Assembly: GCF_006345805.1 (NCBI RefSeq)
Contig: NC_043004.1
Coordinates: 31,744,001-31,808,000, forward strand
Length of the DNA stretch: 64,000 nt
Direction of reading: 5' to 3'
Source: Octopus sinensis
Taxonomy: Eukaryota
Shown here: positions 1,023 through 24,276 of the stretch, one piece after another
Position numbering within the stretch: position 1 is the stretch's first letter
Layout: every line of letters starts with the position of its first letter
Translations under genes and position numbers: made by a program
Notes under the pieces: model-generated
Told to the model about the DNA's origin: nothing
The model's input: the letters and a program-made list of their open reading frames with translations, nothing else
The model's database searches: none

Positions 1023-1331
1023 ATGTCTGTGTGTTTGTTTTATTGCCTCTTTACCTTGGATTCAGGCAATAGTAGTAAGCAAGTGTCACTGTCATGCAAA
1101 AGTTGTTCTTTATTTCCAGTCTGCCTTGTAAACATGAATGAGTACGGTAAAATATAGCTTGAAAATAGGTAAGGTTTGGTATCAGGAAGGGTATCCAGTC
1201 TTACAAAATGTGTCTGATCCATATGAGCATGGAAAAATGGATGTTTCATATACGTCTATATATATTTTTTTGTTTTTGCATTTGGTTTGCAACATTCTTT
1301 ATGTGAATTCTTGTGTTGAAGCCTATTCTAT

Positions 1332-1615
1332 TGTGTCTGGGGGGAGTCATTCTCTTTTAATGCCTTATTACTTAACACACTCACCAGCTTGATTTCCACT
1401 CATTTACTTATTTATTTTTTCTAAAATTTTCGTTGCGCCTTGCAACTTTTTCAATAGTCATTGACACTCAATAGTTGTTGAGTCAACAAATATTGAAAAG
1501 GTTGCAAGATTCAATGAAAATTTTAGGAAAAATAAATAAGTAAATGAGTGAAAATTGAACCGGTGAGTGCATTAAGTAATAAGGCACTAAAAGAGAATAA
1601 CTCTCCCCAGACACA
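1332..1615. mobile_element. Foldback (inverted-repeat) element with minimal HHR motifs near its axis, Penelope pLTR-like
   Basis: Arm tgtgtctgggggagtcattctctttt...ttgcaactttttcaata is the imperfect reverse complement of tattgaaaaggttgcaa...aaaagagaataactctccccagacaca. A diverged relative lies at ~14440-14600 and extends beyond the left arm. Confidence 0.75.
1421..1457 (-). ncRNA. Minimal type I hammerhead-like motif (U3:A8 core)
   Basis: Minus strand reads CTA-TTGAAAA-A-GTTGC-AAGGC-GCAAC-GAAA-ATTT-TAG. It has a 3-bp stem I, a perfect 5-bp stem II, a palindromic stem III and a UUU cleavage triplet. Confidence 0.5.
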
Positions 1616-1616
1616 G

Positions 1617-1619
<3 letters not shown>

Positions 1620-1675
<56 letters not shown>
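1620..1675. repeat. (TA)n microsatellite abutting the left end of the ribozyme array
   Basis: Directly visible. Confidence 0.95.
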
Positions 1676-1678
<3 letters not shown>

Positions 1679-1830
1679 TTATCGCCATACTAATATGGCA
1701 TTCTTATAAAAATAAGAAAAAAGCTGACCGCTTATTAGCTCCATGAGGCCATCGCCTTAAGTTAGCTATTTGATACACAATCTGTATCCATATAATCTTT
1801 GAACAAGGGAGGTCAGTCGCTCCACACTAC

Positions 1831-1890
1831 TTGGCCGGCAGCTACAGACGCGTTTCGGGGTATTGCCCCTTTTCAATGCAGCGTAGCCAA
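1831..1890 (-). ncRNA. Type I hammerhead ribozyme, monomer 1 (predicted cleavage between 1847 and 1846)
   Basis: Minus strand reads TTGGC-TAC-GCTGCA-TTGAAAA-GGGG-CAATA-CCCC-GAAA-CGCGTC^TGTAGC-TGCCG-GCCAA. Stem I is GCUGCA/UGUAGC, the core is UUGAAAA (U3:A8), stem II is 4 bp, stem III is the palindromic ACGCGU, and the triplet is GUC. Confidence 0.85.
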
Positions 1891-2193
1891 ACCAGTAGAT
1901 GTCGCTTCCGACAATCTCTGTTCAAAGGTTTTATTTACCTAGCTTCGGTGGAATACATCCACTTGTTTTCAATAATAGAAATATTAAAATTACTAAGTCT
2001 CTCTAAAAGAGAACAACGGCAGCGTTCCCGGAAAATATTAGTTATCGCCATACTAATATGGCATTCTTATAAAAATAAGAAAAAAGCTGACCGCTTATTA
2101 GCTCCATGAGGCCATCGCCTTAAGTTAGCTATTTGATACACAATCTGTATCCATATAACCTTTGAACAAGGGAGGTCAGTCGCTCCACACTAC

Positions 2194-2253
2194 TTGGCCG
2201 GCAGCTACAGACGCGTTTCGGGGTATTGCCCCTTTTCAATGCAGCGTAGCCAA
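2194..2253 (-). ncRNA. Type I hammerhead ribozyme, monomer 2 (cleavage 2210/2209)
   Basis: Identical to the motif at 1831-1890. Confidence 0.85.
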
Positions 2254-2555
2254 ACCAGTAGGTGTCGCTTCCGACAATCTCTGTTCAAAGGTTTTATTTA
2301 CCTAGCTTCGGTGGAATACATCCACTTGTTTTCAATAATAGAAATATTAAAATTACTAAGTCTCTCTAAAAGAGAACAACGGCAGCCTTCCGGAAAATAT
2401 TAGTTATCGCCATACTAATATGGCATTCTTATAAAAATAAGAAAAAAGCTGACCGCTTATTAGCTCCATGAGGCCATCGCCTTAAGTTAGCTATTTGATA
2501 CACAATCTGTATCCATATAACCTTTGAACAAGGGAGGTCAGTCGCTCCACACTAC

Positions 2556-2615
2556 TTGGCCGGCAGCTACAGACGCGTTTCGGGGTATTGCCCCTTTTCA
2601 ATGCAGCGTAGCCAA
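2556..2615 (-). ncRNA. Type I hammerhead ribozyme, monomer 3, immediately downstream of the Tx1 insertion (cleavage 2572/2571)
   Basis: Identical motif. It begins 2 nt after the TSD on the minus strand. Confidence 0.85.
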
Positions 2616-2617
2616 AC

Positions 2618-2634
2618 CAGTAGGTGTCGCTTCC
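2618..2634. repeat. 17-bp TSD cagtaggtgtcgcttcc (copy 1 of 3)
   Basis: The identical 17-mer occurs at 2618-2634, 7962-7978 and 13313-13329. Uninterrupted monomers have a single copy. Confidence 0.95.
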
Positions 2635-2853
2635 TAAATCTTTATTATGATTATAAAAATCTTACAGAGATAGTACATTACAATACAAAACATAATTACA
2701 AAAAGTTTACGTTGTTCGTTGATTATTGATTATGATACTAGACTTTACTTTTCTCCTTTTTTTTTAAAATTAAAAATGATTTTGGCCAGCTAGGTATATC
2801 ACAGTCAGGATTCTTACCCGACAGCCTAAGAGCCCAGAGACTATTTTCTCCCT

Positions 2854-5800
2854 TCATGATGACCAAGCAGGGTTACTCACACCCACCTTTTTTATCACAT
2901 CCTTCCATCGATTCACATACTTTTTCTGTGTCAGGTTCCTCTTCTCTAAATCCATCTTGCTCTTTAGATGGTATCTGAAGTATTTTAACATACCATATCC
3001 AGAGATAAAGGTTCCTGACACCAAACCTTCCAATCTAGTTCTCCACACACACTCTTTCAGTACTGCCACCGTACAGTGAAAACAAGCCTCACCTTCCTTT
3101 GAGAGTCCAGCTGGCGGTATCATCTTTATTATAGAACCAGCCGATAGCTGTACTCATCCCAGATGCGACAACACGTGTTCTACGTAACTTATTAAGCCTG
3201 ACAGCTCCTGACAATGTACAAAAGCGTGCTGGACGGTTTCATCGTCCAACCCACATCTTGGACATGTCGGTGGCACTGACATTCCATGCCTATATAACTT
3301 ATCGCGAACAGGTAGAGCATTCCTATAGCACTGCCAAGTCAGGGATTTTTGGTAATTGTCCAAATACCCCGGCTTGAAAGTCTTCTTAAACAGGTCGGAT
3401 AGTTGATCCTCATCGAACCCCAGAGCCCCTCTTAGGACGTCGTCATTTTTTGCCTCTACCATCCTTCTATAAAATGTCGAGGTGGTATTCCCGCAGCGGC
3501 TTTGCCTATCTTGTGGATCAGCCAGAGTGCCTGTCGGCACTCTTTCTGCCATAAAGTCAGGTTCCGTCTTTTAATGAAACCGGGTTTAAATCTCTCCATA
3601 GAGTCCGGTTGCGGGAAGAAATTATCTGCCAGCGGACTCCACACCTTATCACCTTCCAGGTGAAACAGAGATGTCTCAGTCTCAGCGCATGCCTGCGCAT
3701 CATTAACCAAGGCATCCCCAGCCCACCCTTTAGTGGTTCCTGGCAACACACGGAGCGCCTTACAAGTGGCTTTCCTCCCTTCCACAAAAAGCGGAAAAGG
3801 AGTCGATCCAACTTGCTTAGCCACAAATCGGGGCAAGGCACGACGACAGTCAGGCGATAGGTGATTACAGATGCTATAACACCTGTACCACCTCCGCCCT
3901 CCCTTTCAAGGAAAGATGCCTTCCGGACCACTCCCGAACTATGGCTTCTACCTTGGTCACTACCTCGCTCCAATTTTTCTCCGTCTGGGAGTCTGAACCA
4001 AACCAAACTCCAAGCAATTTAACAGGACCATCTGTCCAGTGTCCAACAACACTGGACGATATCGGCTTGTTCCTCCAGGTGCCGAGGCGCAAACCAGTGG
4101 ACTTGTCCTTGTTAACTTTTGCCCCAGCCACCGCTTCGTATCTTCGGAGAGCACCTTCTACACGAGTTAGTTGTGCTTCGTTGGACACGATGAAGGTGAC
4201 GTCATCCGCATACGCAGAAACAGACTTACTGCATCCGATTTCATTAGGATTGCATCTCACCGTCTCCAACTTCCGCAGCAATGGCTCAAGAGCCAAAACG
4301 TACAGGAGAGGGGACAAGGGACATCCTTGACGAACTGAACGCTTAATCGAAAACGGTTCCGTTAAGTAACCGTTTATCTGGACTGTGGACTTGATACCGC
4401 TGTACATAGCTGATATCCACCCGCGAAAGTCAGGACCTAGCCCAGCCGCTTCGAGAACCGTCGCCAGGTACTGATGATCTACCCTATCAAATGCTTTACT
4501 TTGGTCTAAATGGACCAATGCCCCTCCTTTGCCGGCTAATTGCCCAACCCTGTCTATAGTGTAGCGTAGAAGGTGAAGATTATCTTCGATCGACCTGCCT
4601 GGGATTGCACATGTCTGTGCCTTTCCGACAAGTTTTTCCATGACGACCTTCAACCTTTCTGCTAACACCTTGGCCAAAATCTTTAACTCTACATTAAGTA
4701 GAGTTATGGGCCTATAATTACTAATATTATCCCCCTTGCTCGGGTCTTTCTGGATCAGCGTCACAACTCCCCGGCTCACAGAACTGGGAATCCTCCCATT
4801 CTGTTGCCAGTTTGCGTAGACGCTTGCCAGTATGTCCCCGAACAAGTCCGGCATACAACAATAAAACTCATAGGGCAGACCATCCAGTCCCGGCGACTTT
4901 TCCCGGGCGCATTCAGCCAAAACCCTCTTACCTCCGCGGGAGTAATCGGTCCTTCACAGCGTTCCGCTCTGCTTGGCGAGAGCCGAGGCCCACCAGCTAG
5001 GAAGTTCTGTAAGTCCTCCCCTCGCTCCAGTGGATCGCCCTCCCCAAACAACCGAGCGAAATGCTGTTGAAAGACCTTCTGTATCTCCTCCTGTCCATAG
5101 ATTTTGCGTCCCTGTTCGTCAGTTAAAGACTTAATAGAGGACTTTTTGCCCTTCTGACTCTCCACACGACGTGCCCATCCGGCAACATTAATACCTTCTC
5201 GTTTCACTGCACGTAGCTTAGCTCTGACTCTACATCCTTCATGCTTGGCATTGAGGTGACGGTACAAGATCGTTCTCTCTGCTAACACTCTAGATGCACA
5301 GCCAGATCCCATTGCCTCGTCTAAGTTCTTAACTAAATCGCCCTCTATCTAAACTTAGCTGGTTGCTAAATCTAATGGACTCCAAACGGATGGCTCTTTT
5401 GAGGGCGATCCACCATCTATTATTAATGATGGTTCCACATAATGCCCTCTGGACTAATTCCATAATCCGGTTACGGAAAGCTTCACAAGCCAAAATAGAC
5501 TTGTTCATTTTCCAGTATCCGGGTCCCTGTCTATGGCATTTATCTACATGTACCTCACACGTCACTAATTTGTGATCCGTGTAAGGCACAATACAAAATT
5601 GTGGACAGCTAATGCTATTCCTATCTCGTTCTTTAACAAATACCCTATTATATACGATCTGCGTGAGCCGTCATTGTTACTCCACGTCCACTGTGGAATG
5701 CTCGGCTCATCCATTCGAAACCGATCTACTAGATTAAAGCTCGTCAGTAGACCCTTAAGGCAAGGATTCCCCCTTCTATCAGAGCCCCACACTATCTATC

Positions 5801-6241
5801 CGCGCATCGATGATAGTGTTGAAATCCCCTACCAATACTACCGTTTTAGACGTCACTAGAAAGTGCTCCAAGTTCCGATAAAAACCAGTCTGCCTACCCT
5901 CATTAGGAGCATAAACAGCTACCAACCTGAAGGACTGCTTACTTACATGAGTTACATCGAGGACAACCAGCCTACCTTCTGGGTCCATAAAGACAGTACT
6001 TACCTGTAAGTCCAAGTTCTTCCTGATAAGGACTGCCACGCCTGCACTTCCACTTCCTCCTCGGCTAGGAGAAATAAATTTCTCGTAACCATTGAGAAGA
6101 TGCGAGAACGCTTGGGTTCCTCTCATCTTGGACTCGGTGACAATGGCTACATCTATTCTGTGTGTCCTGAGGTCGTCCAGCAAGCAAGCCTGTTTCCATT
6201 TCGACCATTCCACACATTTATATACAGCCCAACTTAATCAT
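2854..6241 (-). pseudogene. Tx1 ORF2 (AP endonuclease + reverse transcriptase + C-terminal Zn motif), split by frameshifts
   Basis: Motifs: VLVGDFN (APE), KSPGLDGLP, NYRPITLLN, DQSKAFDRV, VRQGCPLSP, AYADDV and CPRCGLDDETVQHAFVHC, across ORFs 5779-6213, 5565-5792, 5329-5589, 4776-5312, 3874-4920, 3557-4006, 3456-3836, 3154-3552 and 2854-3123. Confidence 0.88.
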
Positions 6242-6265
6242 CGATGAATGAAGAAAGTTTGTTAC

Positions 6266-7746
6266 TTACGGTTGTGAGAGGGAGCATGGCAGCTTTTGTC
6301 TGCCTGCCTCCCCCACACTCTCCGTTGTTGCTGGGCATTTAACCGGCGTTGCCACCGGGCTCTGGGATGGAGTGGCTGCCGGGCTAATATTCAATTTTCC
6401 AGCTATCACCTCTTGTGTGACATCTTTAATCAGGTTGTCCCTCACGTGTAGTTGGAAGAGTCTCTCCTTCCATTCCTCCTCTCCAACCTTCGCATACCTC
6501 CAATCCGGGTTTTTTTCCGATGATTTGAAACATTTTATGTTTGGTTTCGCCTTTATGTACCAAACTACTCTCTCGTTTTTTGTGTTATAAGCAATGCACC
6601 TATCGGTTTTTTTGAATCCTTTTAAAGTTGGGGGCTGGGGTTTAATGAAATGCTGGCCTACAAAAGTAGTGCCAGCGGGGTGGGATTGGATAATTTTTTT
6701 TTGTTGTTCTTCTGCGTTTGTTTTTCTTTTTGTTTGGGGTGGGGAGTCCGGGGTATTGGATTTCTTCCTTTTTTGTTGGTTACAGTCGTATATTCCATTA
6801 CTTCCAGTTCTTTTCCATTTGATAAAAATTTTCCACCTCGTTTTCGTTTTCGCTTTGTTTTCCATTCATTTTCTTTTCCTCCTTTTGACTTTCATTTTGC
6901 TTTTTCCGGGTATTCTCTTTTGTTGTTGCTGTGATGTCTGCTTTGTTCTCCACAGCGGTTTGAATGGGGGCATTAACGGGTTTTTTCTTTTTGCACTCTG
7001 AGCGGACGTGACCCTTCTGCCCACATTTGAAACATCTGGGCCTACGTCCCTCCACCGATACCCGCGCAGTGTGTCCATCCCCCACGAAGACCCTGTCTGG
7101 CAAACTCTCCAGCGTTGCATTGTCAGCTTGAACGATCATTTCAAGCTGCTGACCTTTCCAAAATTTTGCCTCTTTCATCCTCATGTTTAAAATGTTTAAT
7201 TTCTCTTCTACGTCGAATGACCGCTGTTGCTGCCCACATTACATCGTAACCTGTTGGTATATCCTCTATTGTTATCTTAGCTGTTCTGCGCCCTAAGTAC
7301 GTGGGCAGCAACAGGATGTCTGCACTCTTCAACGTTTGAGTTGAAATTTCCTTCGCTATGCTAGCCGACTCGAAATGCGCTTCAATAGTAGCGCTTCTCA
7401 CTCCTCGGCCAACATAGCGAACCTTGTTCCAAATTGGTGCCATGCACCGTTCTACCAATTCATTTCTTACATCTGCAATCTTTTTTTCCTTAATATTATA
7501 TACCTTATAAATTACCGTCTTCTCACGGATTGCTTGTAAGGTGTCAGGGGGCGGTATTATTCTCGTTTCTTCTCCATTCCTTTGTATGAACTTTCTGAAC
7601 TTGAAGAGATCCTCCATTGTTACTTCCAGTTCTATAACATTGCCTCCAACGGCTTCCGAAAAACTTTGTTTCTCCTTTGTATCCTTTTGCTTTATAACTT
7701 CTCCCATCTCGGGAAAATCAGAATTTGACGTTAAGTCAAGATCCAT
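6266..7746 (-). pseudogene. Tx1 ORF1 (gag-like, CCHC zinc knuckle), frameshifted
   Basis: VSVEGRRPRCFKCGQKGHVRSEC in ORF 6798-7184. N-terminal part in 7141-7770 (first ATG at 7746), C-terminal part in 6266-6865. Confidence 0.85.
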
Positions 7747-7961
7747 AATAAAATGCAAGTGACTTGTCACAAGACAAGATAAAAATTAAATCCACACTGA
7801 ATTAAAGTTCATATATAAAAAGAAATTTTCTACCCCGAAGGGCGAAAATTACTTTGTTTCACAAGTTAATACTCCAAAAATTGTACGTGTAAATCCAGAA
7901 CAGAACGAACTAACATAACAGCTTACAGCGTAAAATAATCCGACGTAATCCAAGGAAAAAT

Positions 7962-7978
7962 CAGTAGGTGTCGCTTCC
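7962..7978. repeat. 17-bp TSD between the two tandem LINE copies (copy 2 of 3)
   Basis: ...caaggaaaaat-cagtaggtgtcgcttcc-taaatcttt... Confidence 0.95.
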
Positions 7979-8215
7979 TAAATCTTTATTATGATTATAA
8001 AAATCTTACAGAGATAGTACATTACAATACAAAACATAATTACAAAAAGTTTACGTTGTTCGTTTGATATTTACATATGTTGATTATTGATTATGATACT
8101 AGACTTTACTTTTCTCCTTTTTTTTTTTAAATTAAAAATGATTTTGGCCAGCTAGGTATATCACAGTCAGGATTCTTACCCGACAGCCTAAGAGCCCAGA
8201 GACTATTTTCTCCCT

Positions 8216-11200
8216 TCATGATGACCAAGCAGGGTTACTCACACCCACCTTTTTTATCACATCCTTCCATCGATTCACATACTTTTTCTGTGTCAGGTTC
8301 CTCTTCTCTAAATCCATCTTGCTCTTTAGATGGTATCTGAAGTATTTTAACATACCATATCCAGAGACAAAGGTTCCTGACACCAAACCTTCCAATCTAG
8401 TTCTCCACACACACTCTTTCAGTACTGCCACCGTACAGTGAAAACAAGCCTCACCTTCCCTTGAGAGTCCAGCTGGCGGTATCATCTTTATTATAGAACC
8501 AGCCGATAGCTGTACTCGTCCCAGATGCGACAACACGTATTCTACGTAACTTATTAAGCCTGACAGTTCCTGACAATGTACAAAAGCGTGCTGGACGGTT
8601 TCATCGTCCAACCCACATCTTGGACATGTCGGTGGCACTGACATTCCATGCCTATATAACTTATCGCGAACAGGTAGAGCATTCCTATAGCACTGCCAAG
8701 TCAGGGATTTTTGGTAATTGTCCAATACCCCGGCTTGAAAGTCTTCTTAAACAGGTCGGATAGTTGATCCTCATCGAACCCCAGAGCCCCTCTTAGGACG
8801 TCGTCATTTTTTGCCTCTACCATCCTTCTATAAAATGTCGAGGTGGTATTCCCGCAGCCGGCTTTGCCTATCTTGTGGATCAGCCAGAGTGCCTGTCGGC
8901 ACTCTTTCTGCCATAAAGTCAGGTTCCGTCTTTTAATGAAACCGGGTTTAAATCTCTCCATAGAGTCCGGTTGCGGGAAGAAATTATCTGCCAGCGGACT
9001 CCACACCTTATCACCTTCCAGGTGAAACCAGAGATGTCTCAGTCTCAGCGCATGCCTGCGCATCATTAACCAAGGCATCCCCAGCCCACCCTTTAGTGGT
9101 TCCTGGCAACACACGGAGCGCCTTACAAGTGGCTTTCCTCCCTTCCACAAAAAGCGGAAAAGGAGTCGATCCAACTTGCTTAGCCACAAATCGGGGCAAG
9201 GCACGACAGTCAGGCGATAGGTGATTACAGATGCTATAAACACCTGTACCACCTCCGCCCTCCTTTCAAGGAAAGATGCCTTCCGGACCACTCCCAACTA
9301 TGGCTTCTACCTTGGTCACTACCTCGCTCCAATTTTTCTCCGTCTGGGAGTCTGAACCAAACCAAACTCCAAGCAATTTAACAGGACCATCTGTCCAGTG
9401 TCCAACAACACTGGACGATATCGGCTTGTTCCTCCAGGTGCCGAGGCGCAAACCAGTGGACTTGTCCTTGTTAACTTTTGCCCCAGCCACCGCTTCGTAT
9501 CTTCGGAGAGCACCTTCTACACGAGTTAGTTGTGCTTCGTTGGACACGATGAAGGTGACGTCATCCGCATACGCAGAAACAGACTTACTGCATCCGATTT
9601 CATTAGGATTGCATCTCACCGTCTCCAACTTCCGCAGCAATGGCTCAAGAGCCAAAACGTACAGGAGAGGGGACAAGGGACATCCTTGACGAACTGAACG
9701 CTTAATCGAAAACGGTTCCGTTAAGTAACCGTTTATCTGGACTGTGGACTTGATACCGCTGTACATAGCTGATATCCACCCGCGAAAGTCAGGACCTAGC
9801 CCAGCCGCTTCGAGAACCGTCGCCAGGTACTGATGATCTACCCTATCAAATGCTTTACTTTGGTCTAAATGGACCAATGCCCCTCCTTTGCCGGCTAATT
9901 GCCCAACCCTGTCTATAGTGTAGCGTAGAAGGTGAAGATTATCTTCGATCGACCTGCCTGGGATTGCACATGTCTGTGCCTTTCCGACAAGTTTTTCCAT
10001 GACGACCTTCAACCTTTCTGCTAACACCTTGGCCAAAATCTTTAACTCTACATTAAGTAGAGTTATGGGCCTATAATTACTAATATTATCCCCCTTGCTC
10101 GGGTCTTTCTGGATCAGCGTCACAACTCCCCGGCTCACAGAACTGGGAATCCTCCCATTCTGTTGCCAGTTTGCGTAGACGCTTGCCAGTATGTCCCCGA
10201 ACAAGTCCGGCATACAACAATAAAACTCATAGGGCAGACCATCCAGTCCCGGCGACTTTTCCCGGGCGCATTCAGCCAAAACCCCTCTTACCTCCGCGGG
10301 AGTAATCGGTCCTTCACAGCGTTCCGCTCTGCTTGGCGAGAGCCGAGGCCCACCAGCTAGGAAGTTCTGTAAGTCCTCCCCTCGCTCCAGTGGATCGCCC
10401 TCCCCAAACAACCGAGCGAAATGCTGTTGAAAGACCTTCTGTATCTCCTCCTGTCCATAGATTTTGCGTCCCTGTTCGTCAGTTAAAGACTTAATAGAGG
10501 ACTTTTTGCCCTTCTGACTCTCCACACGACGTGCCCATCCGGCAACATTAATACCTTCTCGTTTCACTGCACGTAGCTTAGCTCTGACTCTACATCCTTC
10601 ATGCTTGGCATTGAGGTGACGGTACAAGATCGTTCTCTCTGCTAACACTCTAGATGCACAGCCAGATCCCATTGCCTCGTCTAAGTTCTTAACTAAATCG
10701 CCCTCTATTCTAGTCCTATCTAAACTTAGCTGGTTGCTAAATCTAATGGACTCCAAACGGATGGCTCTTTTGAGGGCGATCCACCATCTATTATTAATGA
10801 TGGTTCCACATAATGCCCTCTGGACTAATTCCATAATCCGGTTACGGAAAGCTTCACAAGCCAAAATAGACTTGTTCATTTTCCAGTATCCGGGTCCTGT
10901 CTATGGCATTTATCTACATGTACCTCACCGTCACTAATTTGTGATCCGTGTAAGGCACAATACAAAATTGTGGACAGCTAATGCTATTCCTATCTCGTTC
11001 TTTAACAAATACCTATCTATATACGATCTGCGTGAGCCGTCATTGTTACTTCCACTGTGGAATGCTCGGCTCATCCATTCGAAACCGATCTACTAGATTA
11101 AAGCTCGTCAGTAGACCCTTAAGGCAAGGATTCCCCCTTCTATCAGACGAGCCCACACTATCTATCCGCGCATCGATGATAGTGTTGAAATCCCCTACCA

Positions 11201-11603
11201 ATACTACCGTTTTAGACGTCACTAGAAAGTGCTCCAAGTTCCGATAAAAACCAGTCTGCCTACCCTCATTAGGAGCATAAACAGCTACCAACCTGAAGGA
11301 CTGCTTACTTACGTGAGTTACATCGAGGACAACCAGCCTACCTTCTGGGTCCATAAAGACAGTACTTACCTGTAAGTCCAAGTTCTTCCTGATAAGGACT
11401 GCCACGCCTGCACTTCCTCCTCGGCTAGGAGAAATAAATTTCTCGTAACCATTGAGAAGATGCGAGAACGCTTGGGTTCCTCTCATCTTGGACTCGGTGA
11501 CAATGGCTACATCTATTCTGTGTGTCCTGAGGTCGTCCAGCAAGCAAGCCTGTTTCCATTTCGACCCCATTCCACGCACATTTATACAGCCCAACTTAAT
11601 CAT
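8216..11603 (-). pseudogene. Tx1 ORF2, copy 2 (APE-RT), frameshifted
   Basis: Starts MIKLGCINVRG (11046-11603). Includes a 537-aa RT fragment (9266-10879) and C-terminal fragments 8701-9297 and 8216-8725. Confidence 0.88.
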
Positions 11604-11627
11604 CGATGAATGAAGAAAGTTTGTTAC

Positions 11628-13095
11628 TTACGGTTGTGAGAGGGAGCATGGCAGCTTTTGTTTGCCTGCTTCCCCCACATTCTCCGTTGTTGCTGGGCAT
11701 TTAACCGGCGTTGCCACCGGGCTCTGGGATGGAGTGGCTGCCGGGCTAATATTCAATTTTCCAGCTATCACCTCTTGTGTGACATCTTTAATCAGGTTGT
11801 CCCTCACGTGTAGTTGGAAGAGTCTCTCCTTCCATTCCTCCTCTCCAACCTTCGCATACCTCCAATCCGGGTTTTTTTCCGATGATTTGAAACATTTTAT
11901 GTTTGGTTTCGCCTTTATGTACCAAACTACTCTCTCGTTTTTTGTGTTATAAGCAATGCACCTATCGGTTTTTTTGAATCCTTTTAAAGTGGGGGCTGGG
12001 GTTAATGAAATGCTGGCCTACAAAAGTAGTGCCAGCGGGGTGGGATTGGATAATTTTTTTGTGTTGTTCTGCGTTTGTTTTTCTTTTGTGTTGGGGTGGG
12101 GAGTCCGGGGTATTGGATTTCTTCCTTTTGTTGGTTACAGTTGTATATTCCATTACTTCCAGTTCTTTTCCATTTGATAAAATATTTTCCACCTCGTTTT
12201 CGTTTTCGCTTTGTTTTCCATTCATTTTCTTTTCCTCCTTTTGACTTTCATTTTGCTTTTTCCGGGTATTCTCTTTTGTTGTGCTGTGATGTCTGCTTTG
12301 TTCTCCACAGCGGTTTGAATGGGGGCATTAACGGGTTTTTTCTTTTTGCACTCTGAGCGGACGTGACCCTTCTGCCCACATTTGAAACATCTGGGCCTAC
12401 GTCCCTCCACCGATACCCGCGCAGTGTGTCCATCCCCCACGAAGACCCTGTCTGGCAAACTCTCCAGCGTTGCATTGTCAGCTTGAACGATCATTTCAAG
12501 CTGCTGACCTTTCCAAAATTTTGCCTCTTTCATCCTCATGTTTAAAATGTTTAATTTCTCTTCTACGTCGAATACGACCGCTGTTGCTGCCCACATTACA
12601 TCGTAACCTGTTGGTATATCCTCTATTGTTATCTTAGCTGTTCTGCGCCCTAAGTACGTGGGCAGCAACAGGATGTCTGCACTCTTCAACGTTTGAGTTG
12701 AAATTCCTTGCTATGCTAGCCGACTCGAAATGCTTCACAATAGTAGCGCTTCTCACTCCTCGGCCACATAGCGAACCTTGTTCCAAATTGGTGCCATGCA
12801 CCGTTCTACCAATTCATTTCTTACATCTGCAATCTTTTTTTCCTTAATATTATATACCTTATAAATTACCGTCTTCTCACGGATTGCTTGTAAGGTGTCG
12901 GGGGCGGTTATTCTCGTTTCTTCTCCATTCCTTGTATGAACTTTCTGAACTTGAAGAGATCCTCCATTGTTACTTCCAGTTCTATAACATTGCCTCCAAC
13001 GGCTTCCGAAAAACTGTTTTCTCCTTTGTATCCTTTTGCTTTATAACTTCTCCCATCTCGGGAAAATCAAAATTTGACGTTAAGTCAAGATCCAT
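11628..13095 (-). pseudogene. Tx1 ORF1, copy 2, frameshifted
   Basis: CFKCGQKGHVRSEC in ORF 12222-12689; collinear with copy 1. Confidence 0.85.
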
Positions 13096-13312
13096 AATAA
13101 AATGCAAGTGACTTGTCACAAGAGACAAGATAAAAATTAAATCCACACTGAATTAAAGTTCATATATAAAAAGAAATTTTCTACCCCGAAGGGCGAAAAT
13201 TACTTTGTTTCACAAGTTAATACTCCAAAAATTGTACGTGTAAATCCAGAACAGAACGAACTAACATAACAGCTTACAGCGTAAAATAATCCGACGTAAT
13301 CCAAGGAAAAAT

Positions 13313-13329
13313 CAGTAGGTGTCGCTTCC
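13313..13329. repeat. 17-bp TSD (copy 3 of 3)
   Basis: It is followed by gacaatctctgttc, where the monomer resumes in register. Confidence 0.95.
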
Positions 13330-13613
13330 GACAATCTCTGTTCAAAGGTTTTATTTACCTAGCTTCGGTGGAATACATCCACTTGTTTTCAATAATAGAA
13401 ATATTAAAATTACTAAGTCTCTCTAAAAGAGAACAACGGCAGCGTTCCCGGAAAATATTAGTTATCGCCATACTAATATGGCATTCTTATAAAAATAAGA
13501 AAAAAGCTGACCGCTTATTAGCTCCATGAGGCCATCGCCTTAAGTTAGCTATTTGATACACAATCTGTATCCATATAACCTTTGAACAAGGGAGGTCAGT
13601 CGCTCCACACTAC

Positions 13614-13673
13614 TTGGCCGGCAGCTACAGACGCGTTTCGGGGTATTGCCCCTTTTCAATGCAGCGTAGCCAA
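13614..13673 (-). ncRNA. Type I hammerhead ribozyme, monomer upstream of the LINEs (cleavage 13630/13629)
   Basis: Identical motif to 1831-1890. Confidence 0.85.
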
Positions 13674-14383
13674 ACCAGTAGGTGTCGCTTCCGACAATCT
13701 CTGTTCAAAGGTTTTATTTACCTAGCTTCGGTGGAATACATCCACTTGTTTTCAATAATAGAAATATTAAAATTACTAAGTCTCTGTAAAAGAGAACAAC
13801 GGCAGCCTTCCCGGAAAATATTAGTTATCGCCATACTAATATGGCATTCTTATAAAAATAAGAAAAAAGCTGACCGCTTATTAGCTCCATGAGGCCATCG
13901 CCTTAAGTTAGCTATTTGATACACAATCTGTATCCATATATTCCAGTTAAATTTACAATTTAAAAATAGGATAAAATCTTTATAAGAAATTATCAAGTAG
14001 TTAGTATGAAAAACCGGAATATATTCAGTGCTGAATTTTATTCTGAATAAACACCTGTACCGAGATGCAATTGGAAAAGCTCACCTCTTACATAGACATT
14101 CAAGTGTGAACAATTCTATGTACTATGCTGGATACATTTGATGTTCGTCTGGTATGTTGGTTTTTTGTTCCTTTTTATGTGTCTTGATTATGCATGCATG
14201 ACGATTAAAAAGTGCATTTTATGAACTAATTATGAAATCATATGATCTGCAACTGAATCTGTTTTTAAAAGGCTTGCTTCGAGAGTTACATTCCCACACG
14301 TTCGGTAAAATGTGTTTATTATGGTAGTTTTGACTTTAAGAGTCCCTCCTAGTATGAGGCATTTATGTATAGTAATGCCCTTA

Positions 14384-14431
<48 letters not shown>

Positions 14432-15014
14432 TTCGTTTTGGTATGTAGTTTGCAAGATTCTTTATGTGAATTCATGTCTTAAAGCAAATTTTATAGTGTC
14501 TGGGGAGAGTCATATTGTACACCCACCAGTTCGATTTCTACTCATTTTTTATTTATACTTTTTCTCCCAAAATTCTTGTTACTTTTGCCACCTTGTCAAC
14601 CTTGTAATGACATTATTACCATTTTTAAACCCAGGAGAACACCTACTCCAGCTGGTTATTGATGCAATCTGCACCCAATGCATACTGCAAACAGGGAAGC
14701 TTGCAATATATATGTGACAACCGGTCACTGATTTTTCTACATATTGTGAGGTGGAACAAACTACTGCTATCTCTAGTGGATGGGTGTCTACCACTGAGGA
14801 TGAGCAGAAATAGCTCAAAACCAGACAGTCTGGTGGTCTTATCATCACTAGGAGATGGGGTGGGGTACACTCCCCTGCTTGAAATATATATCAGGTGTAG
14901 ATTTCATCAATAATCAACTGGAAGAAGTGTCCACGAAGAAGTTAAAAGCAGTAGTAATGTTGGTTCCTACAGAACAGCCATGTTGAAGTGGCGATAAACA
15001 TTACTTATATATAT

Positions 15015-16882
15015 CATCATCATCATCATCGTTTAACGTCTGCTTTCCATGCTAGCATGGGTTGGACAATTTGACTGAGACTGGCGAACCAGACGGCTGC
15101 ACCAGGCTCCAATTTTGATCTGGCAGAGTTTCTACAGCTGGATGCCCTTCCTAACGCCAACCTCACCAAGAGTGTAGTGGGTGCTTTTATGTGCCACTGG
15201 CACAAGGTCCAGTCAGGCGGTACTGGCAACGGCCACGCTCAAATGGTGTTTTTTACGAGCCACCTACACAGGAGCCAGTCCAGTGGCACTGGCAACGACC
15301 TCACTCGAATGTTTTTTCACATGCCACCAGCACAAGTGCCAGTAAGGCAATGCTGGCAACGATCATGCTTGGATGGTGCTCTTAGCACTCTACTAGCACA
15401 GATGCCAGTCATCAAATTTGATTTCGATTTCACTTGCCTCAACAGAGTTTAGTGTCCAATGAAGGAAAGGTACACATAAGTGGGCTGGTTACACCCGTGG
15501 CATAGGCCACGATGTTATGGTCTCACTTGGCTTGCCATGTCTTCTCAAGTACAGCATATTTCCAAAAGTCTCGATCACTAGTCATTGCCTTGGTGAGGCC
15601 TAATGTTCGAGGGTCATGCTTCACCACTTCATCTCAGGCCTTCCAGGGTCTACTTCTTCCACAGTTTCCCTCAACCGCTAGGGTGTGGCACTTTTTCACA
15701 CAGCTATCCCCATCCATTCTCGCCATACCAGCACATTCGTCCCTCTTGCACACCACATCTGATGCTTCTAAGGTCCAACTTTTCTCTCAAGGTACTTACA
15801 CTCTGTCGAGTATGCACACTGACATTACACATCCATCGGAGCATACTGGCTTCATTCCTTGCGAGCTTATGCATGTCCTCAGCAGTCACAGCCCATGTTT
15901 CACTGCAATGTAGCATGGCTGTTCGTACACATGCATCATACAGTCTACCTTTTACTCTGAGCGAGAGGCCTTTTGTCACCAGCAGAGGTAAGAGCTCTCT
16001 GAACTTTGCCCAGGCTATTCTTATTCTAGCAGCTACACTTTCAGCGCACCCTCCCTTGCTACTGACTTGGTCACCTAGGTAACGGAAGCTATTAACTGCT
16101 TCTAGTTTTTCTCCCTGGAATGTGGCGGAAGTTGTTCTCTGCACATTTTCAGTGTTATTTATTGCTCCTGAGCATCTGCCACACACAAAAACTATCTTCC
16201 CAGTTAACCTTCCTTTGATATCGCTGCACTTCTTATGTGTCCATAGCTTACACTGGGTACATTTTATAGAGTTTCTACCTATGCCTTTTCTATAGATTGA
16301 GCAGGGCCATCTACCTGAAGGGACTTGTGGTTTGCCTGCCTTCCTACTTATTAGGACTTTGGTTTTAGCTAGGTTGACTCTAAGGCCCTTCGATTCTAAT
16401 CCTTGTTTCCACACCTGAAACCTCTCCTCCAGTTCTGATAGTGACTCAGCAATTAGAGCAAGGTCATCAGCATATGGGAGCTCTCAGGGGATCCTATCTT
16501 GAATTCCTGTTATTGCCTGGAGCACTATGATAAATAGGAGGGGGCTGAGGACTGAACCTTGGTGGACCCCTACCTCTACCTGGAATTCTTCACTGTACTC
16601 GTTGCCAACCCTCACCTTACTGAAAGCATCCTTGTACATGGCTTGCTCAGCTCTCACTAACCATTCATCTATCCCTAGTTTTCTCATTGACCACTAGATA
16701 AGGGATTGGGGGACCCTATCAAAGGCTTTCTCCATGTCAACAAAAGCCAGGTACAGAGGCTTATCTTTGGCTATTTCTCCTGCAGCTGTCTTACCAGAAA
16801 TATAGCATCAGTGGTGCTTCTCCCTGGCATGAACCCAAACTGCATCTCATCTAAACTGACTCTCTCCCTAATTAGTTGTGCA
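15015..16882 (-). mobile_element. 5'-truncated RTE-clade LINE with a long 3'UTR and (GAT)n tail
   Basis: Motifs: QFGFMPGRSTTDAIFLVRQLQEK, GVHQGSVLSPLLFIIVL, FRYLG and RIRIAWAKFRELLPLL. The 3'UTR matches 41590-42185. Confidence 0.85.
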
Positions 16883-17760
16883 TATGGCGGTGAGGGTAGT
16901 AGTGCTGGTTTTTTGCCCAGTTTTTGGTTTTCTTGTGGTTGTTGTTGTTTTTCATGATCTTGTTGTTGCTGTTGTTGGGCACGTATTTTGTAAGTGTGTG
17001 TTGCTATCACAAATGTAGCAACAAGGCTTTCTGCCTTTGATGGCCACATGTAAACTTGAATCCTCTCTCAATTGGATTCGATGTGGAATTTTTTCGTAAA
17101 TCATTGAATTAATCTGAGCAAGAACTTTGATTTCTTGGCCAATCCAGTTTTGCTGGTCCATGACAGCGATTTCCAAAATATGGATTTTGTCCTCGATATC
17201 ATAGCAAATGGCGGACATGAGCTACTTTATTTCTATTTCAGGATGCACATTCTTTATTTTAATTTTTTTGACCCTACGGCCAAGGTATGTTGGGAATCAT
17301 CAATAAATTTTCAAATTGGAAGGACTTTGTGGAGAGGTCCTTGGCTCTTTCTTCACTATCGAATCAAACTTTGATCGTGGCAAATTTTTTCGATTTTTTC
17401 CGTGATGTCTTGTGGTGTTTGTAGTTGTATGCTGAGGTCATCATTTTTAACATTGCTTTACAGGCAAACAGTTCATCTTTGGAAAAGCACATGATTGTTT
17501 TCTTTAGCTTTAAAGCTGCGGCAAAATTGTTTCCGGTATCCATGTTGGTAGTGGTGGTAGCAGTGGTAGAGCCAGTGATTGTAGTAGCAGAAGCATTCCT
17601 GATTTCTAAGGCCTGTGTGTGTTCACATGCAACGGCTTTACTTTCAGCTTCCTTCACCTCTAGTATTGGTAGAGGCAGGAAGTCGGCCTCATCATTCCGC
17701 TGAGCCATATTTGTTTAGAAATATGGCAAGGAAATCGAAGAAAATGGAAATGGAAATAAG
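16883..17760 (-). mobile_element. Decayed Tx1-like ORF1 fragment (CCHC knuckle)
   Basis: VAIKGRKPCCYICDSNTHLQNTCP (16952-17218). ILEIAVMDQQNW resembles the ORF at 22046-22645. Confidence 0.65.
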
Positions 17761-17774
17761 TTTGAAACTGACCC

Positions 17775-17923
17775 AAATTGTAAATTTAACTGGAATATAT
17801 GGATACAGATTGTGTATCAAATAGCTAACTTAAGGCGATGGCCTCATGGAGCTAATAAGCGGTCAGCTTTTTTCTTATTTTTATAAGAATGCCATATTAG
17901 TATGGCGATAACTAATATTTTCC
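17775..17923 (+). repeat. Inverted 149-bp copy of the terminal part of the ribozyme array (matches 13813-13961); lacks the HHR
   Basis: Reverse complement of ggaaaatattagttatcgcc...ccatatattccagttaaatttacaattt. Confidence 0.9.
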
Positions 17924-18379: not shown

Positions 18380-21199
18380 AAAGAGGAATTACAACCGTGT
18401 TTCGTGGTCTGCTACCACAACAGCTCCTTTATAGGATCCAGTTAGCTCAAGACATCATCAGGAGGAACCACGTCCGGTTTCGGCCCCTACTCCTCTACCG
18501 TTTTGACGTGGCGCCCCCACCCTTCTTTCGGAGGTGTCTTCAGCTCTGGTGTTGGGTGCATGTCTTCTTTCTTCTGTTCCCTGGCCTCTTCGCTTTTTCT
18601 AAACGACCGTCACCTGACAGGTAGTCCCAGCAAGTTGTCACGTGACACTGTCTCACCTTAACTAACTAGTGAAGGCGCGTAGTTTTAGCCCGCACTTTTT
18701 CTAAACGACCGTCACCTGTCAGTCAGCTGGTCTCACCTAATGATGTTATTTCCCGTCGGCATGTTTATGACTTTCAAGCCATTTTCGGTCTTCCCGCTTC
18801 AGCCATATATAGAAGCTGGCTTTTTCGACCGCCTCCTGTACTCTCCTTATTAGTTTACGCAGCTCGGGGCTAGAAAAAACAAATCTTCTTTTGAAAAGCG
18901 TTGTCATTTTTTTTTCAATGAAGCCTCTAGCCCCCACTGCCAGGTGATAATATTCGACATTCCATCCCTGTTCTCTGCATTCTTCGATTAGCTTTTCATA
19001 CCTCTTCTCCTTTTGTTCCTCTGCATTGCCGATGTTCTCTTCCCAAGGTACTGTCAGTTCTAGTAAAATTCCCATTCTCCGGTCTCTGTTCCAAAGAACT
19101 AAATCCGATCTTTTTGTTGTTTTTATTAGTGGAAATATTACTTGTCTTTCCAAGTCCGTGGCCACCTCCCAGTATCCCTTCAATCTTTCGTCTATCTCGT
19201 ATACTTTACTTGTAGGCCTGGTTTTATAACCTTTTCCCTCTTTGTGGAAGTATACTCTCCTGCGCTTTCTACTTTTGGGTATTCTCCCCTATTGTACCTC
19301 TCAATCTTATTCTTGAGTGCTGCGCTTATGACGCCGAGGACTTGATTATGCCGCCATGTATATCTTTCAATTGCTAGTCTGCAACCTGACAGAACATGTC
19401 TAACCGTCGCTTTCTCTCCGCATCTCCCTTCGTCGGTTGTTTTTATGTTCCACCGGACTAAGTTCGCCGGTGAGGGTAGAACGTCGAAGGTAGGCTTGAT
19501 CAGGAAGGATGTTCTTGCTTGTTCCCAAGCCCAAAGTTCCTTCCCTGATATTCTGCGGTTGATCACATATTCCTCCCATCTCAGGCACTGTCCCTGTTGA
19601 CTGCATTGCACCAAATGTACATTTCGCCTTTATTCTTCCTCCTTTCTCACTTCGTATACCACTGCCTCTTTCATCTCTTTTTCTCTTGCAAAATGGCCTG
19701 AAGTTTTGCGATGCTAGGCCGGTTCTAGCTTCTTGCGTCGCTCCGACTATATCTGCGTGCCTTAATTTTCTGATCGCCCTGTTTACTGCCTCTTCCGCCT
19801 TCCATTTCCTCCCTGTTCGTACCTTTGGAGGGTTTTCCTGGATGCTCTGATCTTTTGAGTACCTTAGCATCATTACTGTCCTTGCCTTTCCTGCCTTATA
19901 TTCTTCGGCGATTGATGTTATTGGTAGTTGCAGCACGGGTTTTCCATATAGTGCAGTTGTATTCAGTGGTTTCGGCAGACCAAGCCATTTTCTGATAAAC
20001 ACACTGCATCTTTGCTCCATCTTTTCTACTATACTCGAGGCTATTTCGTACATTTGCAATGACCACATAATTCTTGGGTATAGCCCAAATTGCAGTATCT
20101 AACATTTGAATTTTCCCAGCAGCGTTGTTCTGTCAATTGCCTTTAATCCTTGTTCTACTAACTCGTGCGTTTCTTTCCCTTGCTTCTTATCATTTAATAA
20201 ATCTCTATACCATCTGCCGAGACTCTTTACTGGTTGTTCTTTCACCGTTGGTATGTCTTCACTTCCTATCCTAAATTTCACTTCTTCTTGCCTTCCTTTC
20301 ACGAAAGCCACGCTTCGAGATTTTTTGGCTTTGAATTTCATCCTTGCCCATCCTATCAGTTCGTCCAACCGCTCTAACGTTCCCTCTGCTGCTTCTCTAC
20401 TTTCCGATAATATAGTTACATCGTCCATAAAAGCCCTTAATGGTGTCTTTGTAACAGCTTTCTCACAGTTTGTAGATCTGAGTAGCATTTCCATGACTAG
20501 CACGAATAAGATGACTGATATCGTGCATCCGGCTGCAATACCTATTTAAAGCCGTTGCCACTCCGTTGTGAACTTACCTGCTGTAAATTTCATCCTCAGG
20601 TTGTCGTAGTACGACATGAGCATTCGTTGAACATCTTTTGGAATCCAAAAGACGTCCATCGCTGTTTTTATTATTGCGTGCGGAACAGATCCATAGGCAT
20701 TGGCAAGATCTAGCCAAACAATATACAGGTTTGTCTTCTTTTGTTTTGCACAGGTGATGGCTTCCCAGATGGAAAATGCGTGTTCTATGCACCCAGGGAT
20801 TCCTGCTTTTTGAATCGCTTCATTAACGTATCCGTTATGCTGTACGAATCTTATAATTCGTCTAGCAATTATTCCAAACATGATTTTCCCGTCTGTATTT
20901 AGTAGTGAAATCGGTCTAAATTGGCCTAGTGCTTTTGCCTCTTTTTCTTTAGGTAGATAGATACCTTCGGCTATACACCATCGCTCCGCTACATCTTTCT
21001 TCTTCCACATTTCTCTTATCAGTGCAAACAGCTGCAAACGTAATTTTGGGCAATATTTGTATACCTTGTAGCTCACTCCATCGTTCCCTGGTGCACTTTT
21101 TGCTCTTGCTTTCCTTATGAATTCATCCATTTCTTTCCGTTTGATGTCGCTCAAATCAAATGGTACTCTTGGTTCAGGTGGTTTCTTCAGTCCGTGCAT
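18380..21199 (-). mobile_element. 5'-truncated Hero-like (R2 group) non-LTR retrotransposon with RT and restriction-like endonuclease; frameshifted
   Basis: Motifs: KARAKSAPGNDGVSYKVYK, FRPISLLN, WLDLANAYGSVPH, FMDDVT, degenerate knuckle RCGEKATVRHVLSGC, RYTWRHNQVL, and RLE KRSDLVLW...LELTVPWEEN...KEKRY. The 3' boundary is approximate. Confidence 0.82.
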
Positions 21200-23719: not shown

Positions 23720-24256
23720 ATAGGTAAATAGATTTCTTTATTGGCCACGCAGGGCTGAACACAGAAGGGACAAAATACAAAGTAGGGCTTTTCTTTTTGG
23801 GAAGAAGAGAAGAGGAAAAAGGGGGGGGGAATTCCGATCAAAAGGGATCGTGAAAAAAAAGTGGGGCCAATCAACAGGGATCGTGTATCACAGAAATGTC
23901 AATGTAAAAGAGGAAAACAGATTATGTTTGTCCGTGGATAGAAAAGCCAACGGAAAAGACCACGGGAACTTTGAACAATAGTGTCATGCAAAAAGAAAAC
24001 ACATCACAGTAAGTGGCTCTCTTTTTTCCTTTTTCGCTTGAGAGCAACACAACACTCGCGGTGCCATTCACCCTTCCTCGGCCACTTTTTGATCCACGAC
24101 TGCAGTTCGGTCATGGAGACGAGCTGTGGGAAAGCGCGCCTCACAAACAGTGGCCACACCTGTTCACCGTTGTCTTTGTAGAGCCAGAGATGTCGCAGTC
24201 TCAGCGCATGTCTGCACATCATCAACCATGGCATGCCCAGCCCTCCTTTTAACGGG
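23720..24256 (-). mobile_element. Internally deleted Tx1 3' fragment flanked by duplicated (GA)n-containing sequence
   Basis: MPWLMMCRHALRLRHLW (24004-24234) is homologous to ORF2 of 2635-7961. The 3' end reads AATAAAGAAATCTAT. gagcccatttgactag.gtccga(GA)n occurs on both sides. Confidence 0.72.
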
Positions 24257-24276
24257 TTGAGCCCATTTGACTAGTG

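What the first reader, a model, noticed from the sequence alone, without database searches (positions are those of the whole stretch)
2618..13329. Tx1 LINE apparently targets a hammerhead-ribozyme repeat: two full-length copies at one nucleotide position
Seen: two ~5.33-kb Tx1 elements lie head-to-tail in the same orientation as the ribozyme. They are separated and flanked by three identical 17-bp TSDs (sense GGAAGCGACACCTACTG), which end 2 nt before the HHR stem-I extension, and the monomer resumes in exact register. Known: Tx1-clade APE elements are often sequence-specific for multicopy targets (snRNA, tRNA or 5S genes, microsatellites, other transposons), and repeated insertion at one site gives this element-TSD-element pattern. 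Inference: this family is a site-specific parasite of a ribozyme-bearing retrozyme or pLTR repeat. I do not know of that target class for Tx1, but I cannot check the literature here.
Basis: partly seen in the sequence, partly recalled or inferred. Interest (0 to 1): 0.9.

Follow-up and report, generated by a model that had tools for sequence, protein, structure and literature searches.

The report
LINE pair inside a ribozyme repeat
Two full-length copies of an L1/Tx1-type jumping gene sit head-to-tail at exactly the same 17-base site inside a small tandem repeat carrying a hammerhead-like self-cleaving RNA motif, which suggests, but from one locus does not prove, that this element family specifically targets that repeat.

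Summary
On the minus strand, two LINE copies (2635-7961, 5327 bp; 7979-13312, 5334 bp) with identical ends lie head-to-tail. Three exact copies of GGAAGCGACACCTACTG separate and flank them, inside one monomer of a 363-bp tandem array that resumes in exact register.

The element has a CCHC ORF1 and an APE-RT-zf-RVT ORF2. Its best solved relative is human L1 ORF2p, so it belongs to the L1/Tx1 group. Tx1 clade membership is likely but was not formally tested.

Rfam finds no hammerhead. However, each monomer fits the metazoan type I hammerhead architecture with the published U3-A8 core covariant, and no shuffle of the window produced such a motif. The monomer also has non-LTR-retrozyme traits.

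A genome-wide census of this family's flanks was impossible. Support for site-specific reinsertion is indirect: in another assembly, two distinct subfamilies of a related LINE sit head-to-tail at one shared target.

Tx1 elements are already known to target satellites and other transposons, so this is probably a new member of a known kind. The idea that it exploits the hammerhead is speculative.

The parts
1676..2634 (-). Part of the 363-bp tandem array lying 3' of the LINE pair in sense orientation (about 2.65 monomers). It abuts (AT)29 at 1619-1675.
   Evidence: TRF period 363, 99% matches; monomer comparison about 0.3% divergence; GC 41%
13313..13961 (-). Part of the same array lying 5' of the LINE pair in sense orientation (about 1.7 monomers, 13313-13940), plus a 21-bp non-monomer tail (13941-13961)
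2618..2634 (-). Target-site duplication copy 3 (3' of LINE copy A), followed by the intact hammerhead-like motif
7962..7978 (-). Target-site duplication copy 2, the only sequence between the two LINE copies
13313..13329 (-). Target-site duplication copy 1 (5' of LINE copy B)
2635..7961 (-). LINE copy A, 5327 bp with full-length ends. ORF2 is broken by at least 5 frameshifts. APE about 5785-6204, RT about 3889-5013, C-terminal region about 2896-3477.
7979..13312 (-). LINE copy B, 5334 bp with full-length ends. ORF2 is broken by at least 3 frameshifts.
12222..12689 (-). Copy B ORF1 piece with a CCHC zinc knuckle
   Evidence: Pfam zf-CCHC E=1.7e-5
11046..11603 (-). Copy B apurinic-like endonuclease piece
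   Evidence: Pfam Exo_endo_phos E=2.6e-10; best PDB match L1 endonuclease, 6.5e-8
9266..10879 (-). Copy B reverse transcriptase piece (537 aa open)
   Evidence: Pfam RVT_1 E=3.9e-33; human L1 ORF2p 6e-42 against R2 7e-24
8216..8725 (-). Copy B C-terminal zinc-binding piece
   Evidence: Pfam zf-RVT E=1.5e-10
2566..2607 (-). Hammerhead-like motif nearest the LINE 3' end: GCUGCA|UUGAAAA|GGGG-CAAUA-CCCC|GAAA|CGCG|U|C^UGUAGC. The predicted cut lies between 2572 and 2571, 46 nt after the TSD.
   Evidence: descriptor hit, 0 hits in 200 shuffles; fold
2204..2245 (-). Hammerhead-like motif, second copy
1841..1882 (-). Hammerhead-like motif, third copy
13624..13665 (-). Hammerhead-like motif upstream of the LINE pair. 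The predicted cut is 317 nt before the 5' end of copy B.
17775..17923 (+). Inverted solo copy of the array's 5' edge (21-bp tail plus 128 bp of monomer), 100% identical

Best explanation
Shown: a 363-bp tandem repeat with the traits of an animal non-LTR retrozyme carries a type I hammerhead-like motif with a U3-A8 core. One of its monomers was hit by an L1/Tx1-group LINE (ORF1 with a CCHC knuckle; ORF2 with APE, RT and zf-RVT). Inferred: the element's endonuclease recognises this monomer and nicks the two strands 17 bp apart. The bottom strand is nicked between ...GATTGTC and GGAAGCG..., and the top strand after ...CTACTG. A second, independent insertion then reused the same site next to the first copy, giving element-TSD-element-TSD flanked by the target. 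Also inferred: because AATAAA lies only 6 nt before the element's 3' end, its mRNA probably ends inside the downstream target sequence. That target-derived tag could pair with the nicked target DNA and start reverse transcription exactly at the element's last base. This would explain the precise junctions without poly(A). Insertion in the sense orientation of a repeat that is transcribed in other animals would also give the element a free promoter.
For: Structure. Domains and group. The two copies are genuinely different, with 28 clean substitutions and 30 indels, including a 17-bp and an 11-bp indel that are not slippage products. The flanking monomers differ by only about 0.3%. Unequal exchange between the much longer 363-bp monomers would leave whole monomers between the copies, not 17 bp (reasoning). 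Relatives: in ENA assembly ERZ21867824, two subfamilies only 77% identical lie head-to-tail in two loci, in different orders, next to the same upstream and downstream target sequence. Duplication cannot produce that. A 52%-identical relative forms a pure tandem array. The Argonauta relative has a 16-bp TSD, so stagger lengths of 16-17 bp recur in this lineage. AATAAA lies 4-7 nt before the 3' end in the window element and in all relatives examined. Target-specific Tx1 families, including satellite and transposon targets, are documented in PMC4494074. L1-group LINEs in molluscs and octopus are classed Tx1/L1-Tx1 (PMC10294476, PMC13282606).
Against: There is only one locus and no other copy of this family, so genome-wide specificity is untested. 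Three intact copies of the 17-mer in the same array are unoccupied, while the reused site had one flank replaced by LINE sequence. The nearest named relative, in Argonauta, sits in an unrelated site. Both copies are frameshifted, and their differences are unusually rich in indels, which may partly be assembly error. Tx1 clade membership is not established by phylogeny.
Confidence: 0.55

Rival explanations
1. There was a single insertion, site-specific or not. The element plus one TSD was then duplicated, either by a recombination or replication-slippage event that used the two 17-bp TSDs as the only direct repeats flanking the element, or by a template switch between two target-tagged RNAs within one integration event.
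For: The ends and the TSDs are identical in both copies. The copies are 98-99% identical. Only one of four sites in the array is occupied.
Against: 17 bp is very short for homologous exchange when 363-bp repeats flank the element on both sides, and exchange between those would leave whole monomers between the copies. The copies differ about 3-4 times more than the surrounding monomers do. Relatives show head-to-tail pairs of different subfamilies, which duplication cannot produce.
Confidence: 0.22
2. The tandem is an assembly artefact. A single, possibly heterozygous, insertion was written twice because the assembler looped through the repeated 17-mer or placed both haplotypes in series.
For: The differences between the copies are unusually indel-rich, about 1 indel per substitution, and many are at short runs or repeats, as in poorly polished long-read consensus. 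Both ORF sets are frameshifted.
Against: The internal junction (3' end, 17-mer, 5' end) is exact and could only come from reads that contain it. There is no gap or N. The 17-bp and 11-bp indels are not error-like. Tandem arrays of related LINEs occur in two other independent assemblies.
Confidence: 0.08
3. The repeat is an ordinary satellite or transposon fragment without ribozyme activity. The hammerhead resemblance is then fortuitous or a dead relic, and the LINE simply targets, or happened to land in, a repeat.
For: No Rfam hammerhead model matches, even at E<=10 on a 105-nt stretch. The four copies are identical, so there is no covariation evidence. U3-A8 and minimal PLE-type hammerheads cleave poorly in vitro (PMC4209133).
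Against: All core positions, the 6-bp helix I, the 4-bp helix II with G10.1-C11.1, the 1-bp helix III with a palindromic CGCG loop and a GUC cleavage triplet are present. There were 0 hits in 200 shuffles of 64 kb and 0 in about 88 kb of other loci. The U3-A8 covariant is documented in about 1300 Schistosoma motifs (PMC4209133). The monomer cut from site to site folds with z=-6.9, has 41% GC and is 363 bp long, as described for retrozymes (PMC7229834).
Confidence: 0.2

Closest known systems
Tx1L in Tx1D (Xenopus laevis) and other target-specific Tx1-clade LINEs (Keno/U2 snRNA, Mutsu/5S, Kibi and Koshi/microsatellites, Tx1-Mar/Mariner, satellite-targeting families)
   Same: An APE-type LINE of the L1/Tx1 group with two ORFs, inserted precisely at one sequence inside another multicopy repeat. 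Ends are full-length and precise, and there is no poly(A) at the junction. Other transposons and satellites are known targets (PMC4494074, PMC1950540). From memory, Tx1L sits in the internal tandem repeats of Tx1D (Garrett et al. 1989).
   Different: The target here is a hammerhead-bearing retrozyme-like repeat, for which I found no report. Clade membership and genome-wide specificity are not demonstrated here.
R2 and other LINEs processed from co-transcripts by self-cleaving ribozymes (HDV-like in R2 and L1Tc, twister variants in Schistosoma)
   Same: A site-specific LINE in a tandem, transcribed target in sense orientation. A ribozyme lies near the element's end, and target-derived RNA tags could guide priming (PMC3774820, PMC8501958).
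   Different: In those cases the ribozyme belongs to the LINE and sits at its 5' end. Here the ribozyme belongs to the target and lies 63 nt downstream and 317 nt upstream of the LINE pair. R2 uses a restriction-like endonuclease, not APE. No processing is shown here.
Animal non-LTR retrozymes and PLE pLTR hammerhead repeats
   Same: For the target repeat: a 363-bp tandem monomer with GC below 45% and a type I hammerhead architecture, including a 1-bp helix III with a palindromic loop. The monomer RNA is strongly self-paired. The array is a partial tandem with a short tail, has an inverted partial copy nearby and lies next to (TA)n (PMC7229834, PMC4209133, PMC8557442, bioRxiv 10.64898/2026.07.22.740005).
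   Different: The core is the rare U3-A8 variant and is not recognised by Rfam. There is no Penelope-like ORF in the window, and no expression or cleavage data.

Membership tests
L1/Tx1 group of APE-type non-LTR retrotransposons | ORF2 with an N-terminal APE endonuclease followed by an RT whose closest relatives are L1-group RTs | tested here: met
   Pfam Exo_endo_phos, RVT_1 and zf-RVT in that order. Best PDB matches are human L1 ORF2p (6e-42, against R2 7e-24) and L1-EN.
Tx1 clade (as opposed to L1 proper) | The RT domain groups with Tx1 reference elements in a phylogeny (RTclass1/Repbase) | not testable with these tools
   No Tx1 reference sequences could be obtained, and database hits carry no informative names. 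Indirect evidence: tree-based surveys class mollusc L1-group LINEs as Tx1, and octopus libraries list L1-Tx1 only (PMC10294476, PMC13282606).
Tx1 clade (target-specific members) | Most genomic copies are flanked by the same target sequence at the same position | tested here: inconclusive
   Two insertions at one position in the window. No further copies of the family were reachable. Relatives at 45% identity meet the criterion at four 3' junctions in two loci. The Argonauta relative is in a different site.
Hammerhead ribozyme, type I | Conserved core (C3/U3 U4 G5 A6 N7 G8/A8 A9 ... G12 A13 A14) and an H17 cleavage site between three helices, with helix I open | tested here: met
   UUGAAAA ... 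GAAA ... GUC, with 6-bp helix I, 4-bp helix II (G10.1-C11.1) and 1-bp helix III plus a CGCG loop. U3-A8 is a documented natural covariant (PMC4209133).
Hammerhead ribozyme, type I | Match to the curated Rfam covariance models | tested here: not met
   No hit at gathering score or at E<=10, even on a 105-nt stretch.
Hammerhead ribozyme, type I | Self-cleavage at the predicted site | not testable with these tools
   Needs in vitro transcription of monomer and dimer constructs.
Animal non-LTR retrozyme | Short (150-450 bp) tandem repeats of low GC, each with a type I hammerhead | tested here: met
   363 bp, about 4.3 copies, GC 41%, one motif per monomer; criteria from PMC7229834.
Animal non-LTR retrozyme | Expressed as highly self-paired circular RNA | tested here: inconclusive
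   Self-pairing is supported: MFE -126.4 against -88.6 for shuffles, z=-6.9. Expression and circularity are not testable here.

The most novel reading that the evidence does not exclude
The LINE family is a dedicated parasite of a hammerhead retrozyme, which is itself a non-autonomous parasite of Penelope-like elements. It would use the retrozyme for more than a safe landing site. Sense-oriented co-transcription from the retrozyme array, plus cleavage by the flanking hammerheads 317 nt upstream and 63 nt downstream, would release a LINE RNA with target-derived tags at both ends. Those tags would guide precise priming and 5' joining. The ribozyme would then be supplied by the target rather than by the LINE.
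Probability: 0.15. Interest if true: 0.8.

Novelty: new member of a known kind. Interest (0 to 1): 0.5.

Why it matters
If the family-wide specificity holds, this adds a ribozyme-bearing retrozyme to the list of safe-harbour targets used by Tx1-type LINEs. It would be a case of one retroelement specialising on another element's non-autonomous parasite. It would also provide a natural APE endonuclease with a long, defined recognition site, which is of interest for targeted-insertion tools. Finally, it would give a testable system for whether a target-encoded hammerhead can process a LINE co-transcript, as LINE-encoded HDV-like ribozymes do for R2. If specificity does not hold, this is an ordinary nested-repeat locus.

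Tried and rejected
1. Rfam scans found no hammerhead or any other relevant family. I scanned the window at gathering score, 1.1 kb and 105 nt of the monomer at E<=10, and the relatives' loci. The canonical CUGANGA...GAAA pattern is also absent from the monomer.

2. Protein searches for near-identical copies of the LINE, to obtain more junctions, failed. The best RT hit is 61% identical. The C-terminal piece found nothing.

3. A metagenome scan with the element's 3'-terminal 21-mer gave 23 loci. All were AT-rich chance matches with no further homology.

4. Cluster look-ups gave no names that could assign the Tx1 clade.

5. I looked for sequence shared between the LINE and the monomer, as in a SINE-like partnership. 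Only 10-nt chance matches were found.

6. I looked for a TSD or an enclosing element around the whole array. The similar sequences at 1248-1454 and 14408-14599 are only 70% identical copies of a dispersed repeat.

7. Rolling-circle copying of a LINE-containing circular retrozyme RNA was rejected. It would leave a whole monomer between the LINE copies, not 17 bp.

8. The Tx1L endonuclease paper (PMC85248) is not held in the library.
Full report
**1. What is in the sequence**

A 363-bp tandem array occupies window 1672-2641 (2.7 copies, 99% matches) and continues at 13313-13940. Between the two halves, on the minus strand, lie two copies of one element:
- Copy A: 2635-7961, 5327 bp.
- Copy B: 7979-13312, 5334 bp.

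The two copies have identical 5' ends (ATTTTTCCTTGGATTACG) and identical 3' ends (...CATAATAAAGATTTA).

The 17-mer GGAAGCGACACCTACTG (minus strand) occurs exactly at 2618-2634, 7962-7978 and 13313-13329. It also occurs at the same register of the uninterrupted monomers, at 2256 and 13676 (exact) and at 1893 (one mismatch). Chance expectation is 0.02 matches. The bases next to the junctions do not extend the repeat, so the duplication is exactly 17 bp. Removing the elements and two copies of the 17-mer restores a perfect monomer.

**2. What the element is**

The open pieces of copy B give these Pfam matches, in this order:
- a CCHC zinc knuckle in ORF1 (12222-12689);
- an apurinic-like endonuclease (11046-11603);
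- a reverse transcriptase (9266-10879);
- a zf-RVT domain (8216-8725).

The best solved relatives are human L1 ORF2p for the RT (6e-42, against 7e-24 for R2) and the L1 endonuclease for the APE piece. It is therefore an APE-type LINE of the L1/Tx1 group.

I could not obtain Tx1 reference sequences, so Tx1 clade membership is not tested. It is likely, because tree-based surveys of molluscs find Tx1 as the L1-group clade, and octopus repeat libraries list only L1-Tx1 (PMC10294476, PMC13282606). The best database relatives are cephalopod proteins: Argonauta hians at 55-63% identity and Acanthosepion. The window is therefore probably cephalopod.

Both copies are frameshifted at different places. 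They differ by 28 clean substitutions and 30 indels. Many indels are at short runs, which may be consensus error. A 17-bp and an 11-bp indel are not error-like. The flanking monomers differ by only about 0.3%.

**3. Is the target a hammerhead repeat?**

Rfam says no at every threshold, and the canonical CUGANGA core is absent. Read on the minus strand, however, each monomer contains:

GCUGCA | UUGAAAA | GGGG-CAAUA-CCCC | GAAA | CGCG | U | C^UGUAGC

This is a type I hammerhead with these features:
- a 6-bp helix I;
- a 4-bp helix II with G10.1-C11.1;
- a one-base-pair helix III capped by a palindromic tetraloop;
- a GUC cleavage triplet;
- a core in which C3-G8 is replaced by U3-A8.

Cervera and de la Pena (PMC4209133) describe this helix architecture as the metazoan norm. 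They report U3-A8 as a natural covariant in about 1300 Schistosoma PLE motifs.

A descriptor that encodes these features hit only the four monomer sites (1841-1882, 2204-2245, 2566-2607, 13624-13665). It gave no hit in 200 dinucleotide shuffles of the window. A laxer version gave nothing in about 88 kb of related loci.

The monomer RNA, cut from predicted site to predicted site, folds at -126.4 kcal/mol against -88.6 +/- 5.5 for shuffles (z=-6.9). Its GC content is 41%. The size, tandem arrangement, GC content and self-pairing match animal non-LTR retrozymes (PMC7229834).

The array also shows traits described for insertions made by Penelope-like elements (PMC8557442):
- it abuts an (AT)29 tract;
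- it carries a 21-bp tail at one end;
- it has a 100% identical inverted partial copy, including the tail, at 17775-17923.

I rate the hammerhead reading at about 0.8. Activity is untested, and such minimal variants cleave poorly in vitro.

**4. Is the family site-specific?**

No protein at 90% identity or more exists in the searched collection. A metagenome scan with the 3' end returned only AT-rich chance matches.

The evidence is indirect:

(a) Two insertions share one nucleotide position and one stagger length.

(b) The only alternative routes are a duplication through the 17-bp repeats or an assembly loop. Exchange between the much longer 363-bp repeats would leave whole monomers between the copies. 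The internal junction is exact.

(c) The lineage behaves this way elsewhere. In ENA assembly ERZ21867824, two subfamilies (X and Y, 77% nucleotide identity, about 45% amino-acid identity to the window RT) lie head-to-tail in two loci, in different orders. They are always next to the same upstream sequence (...CCAATCACAATCC...CCATAAATAGCTC...) and the same downstream sequence (GCCTTGCTAAAGACGTTGC...GTGTGTTTCGTATTTCAACA). X and Y also carry 35-60 nt of target-like sequence at their 5' ends. Different subfamilies in tandem cannot arise by duplication.

(d) A 52%-identical relative forms a pure tandem array with a 7.55-kb period.

(e) The Argonauta relative has a 16-bp TSD.

Evidence against:
- The Argonauta copy sits in an unrelated AT-rich site with no hammerhead.
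- None of the relatives' targets contains a hammerhead.
- Three intact 17-mers in the window array are empty.

**5. Mechanism**

Shown: the 17-bp staggered duplication, the sense orientation relative to the hammerhead, the precise ends without poly(A), and AATAAA 4-7 nt before the 3' end in the window element and in all relatives.

Inferred:
- The APE domain nicks the bottom strand at ...GTCGCTTCC^GACAATC... (plus strand).
- The mRNA ends in the downstream target, and that tag pairs with the nicked DNA, so reverse transcription starts at the element's last base.
- The top strand is cut 17 bp away.
- A later insertion reused the site next to the first copy.

Speculative: the hammerheads 317 nt upstream and 63 nt downstream process a retrozyme-LINE co-transcript, by analogy with R2 (PMC3774820). 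The conserved AATAAA offers a simpler route to the 3' end, which weakens the need for the ribozyme.

**6. Comparison and novelty**

Target-specific Tx1 families are known for snRNA, 5S and tRNA genes, microsatellites, satellites, and DNA and LTR transposons (PMC4494074). Tx1L itself sits in another transposon (PMC1950540). I found no paper that links Tx1 elements with hammerhead or retrozyme targets.

The finding is best filed as a probable new member of a known kind: a Tx1-like, target-specific LINE with a new target. It carries a low-probability but interesting extension, exploitation of a target-encoded ribozyme.

Confidence in the main explanation is 0.55. Interest is 0.5.

Noticed in passing
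window 17775-17923 (+), compared with 13813-13961: A 149-bp piece is 100% identical to the array's sense-5' edge (21-bp non-monomer tail plus 128 bp of monomer). It lies inverted 3.8 kb away. The array and this solo piece start at the same monomer position and stop at nearly the same one, which suggests a mobile unit with defined ends (a PLE-style partial tandem) or a local inverted duplication.
   Followed up: partly
L027 7147-20915 and L028 388-21502 (ENA ERZ21867824): Two LINE subfamilies, 77% identical to each other and about 45% amino-acid identity to the window RT, lie head-to-tail at one shared target. The target has a CCAAT/TATA-like upstream flank. The elements carry 35-60 nt of target-like sequence at their 5' ends. 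The target has no Rfam match, so its identity is unknown.
   Followed up: partly
L003 1-18444 (ENA ERZ26052130, ctg11195c): The contig is a pure head-to-tail array of a related LINE (52% identity) with a 7.55-kb period. Adjacent units are 93.7% identical and alternate units are 100% identical. The contig name suggests it was assembled as a circle.
   Followed up: partly
window 16424-17296, 20027-22663, 23926-24261 (minus strand): Degraded pieces of other APE-type LINEs (25-30% amino-acid identity to the element studied; RVT_1 at 20546-21199). One 68-bp stretch at 24184-24251 is 88% identical to copy B. The region is rich in transposons.
   Followed up: partly
window 1320-1618 and 14430-14600: A near-perfect ~300-bp palindrome (MITE-like) lies just left of the (AT)29 tract. 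A 70%-identical partial copy of the same dispersed repeat lies right of the array, next to another (AT)22 tract.
   Followed up: partly
window 29767-30308 and 31370-31591: Two arrays of a 40-bp tandem repeat (13.6 and 5.6 copies, 96-98% matches). Each is flanked by long (TG)n and (TC)n microsatellites, so a larger ~1.6-kb unit appears to be duplicated.
   Followed up: no
window 15192-15343, 41728-42025, 60593-60773: Tandem repeats of 66-67 bp with a related consensus (...GCCAGTGGCACGTAAAAAGCACC...) recur at three places. They are probably part of an abundant SINE-like family.
   Followed up: no
window 15704-16414 (minus strand): A 236-aa ORF with a weak PHD-finger match (E=7e-4, below Pfam's cut-off).
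   Followed up: no
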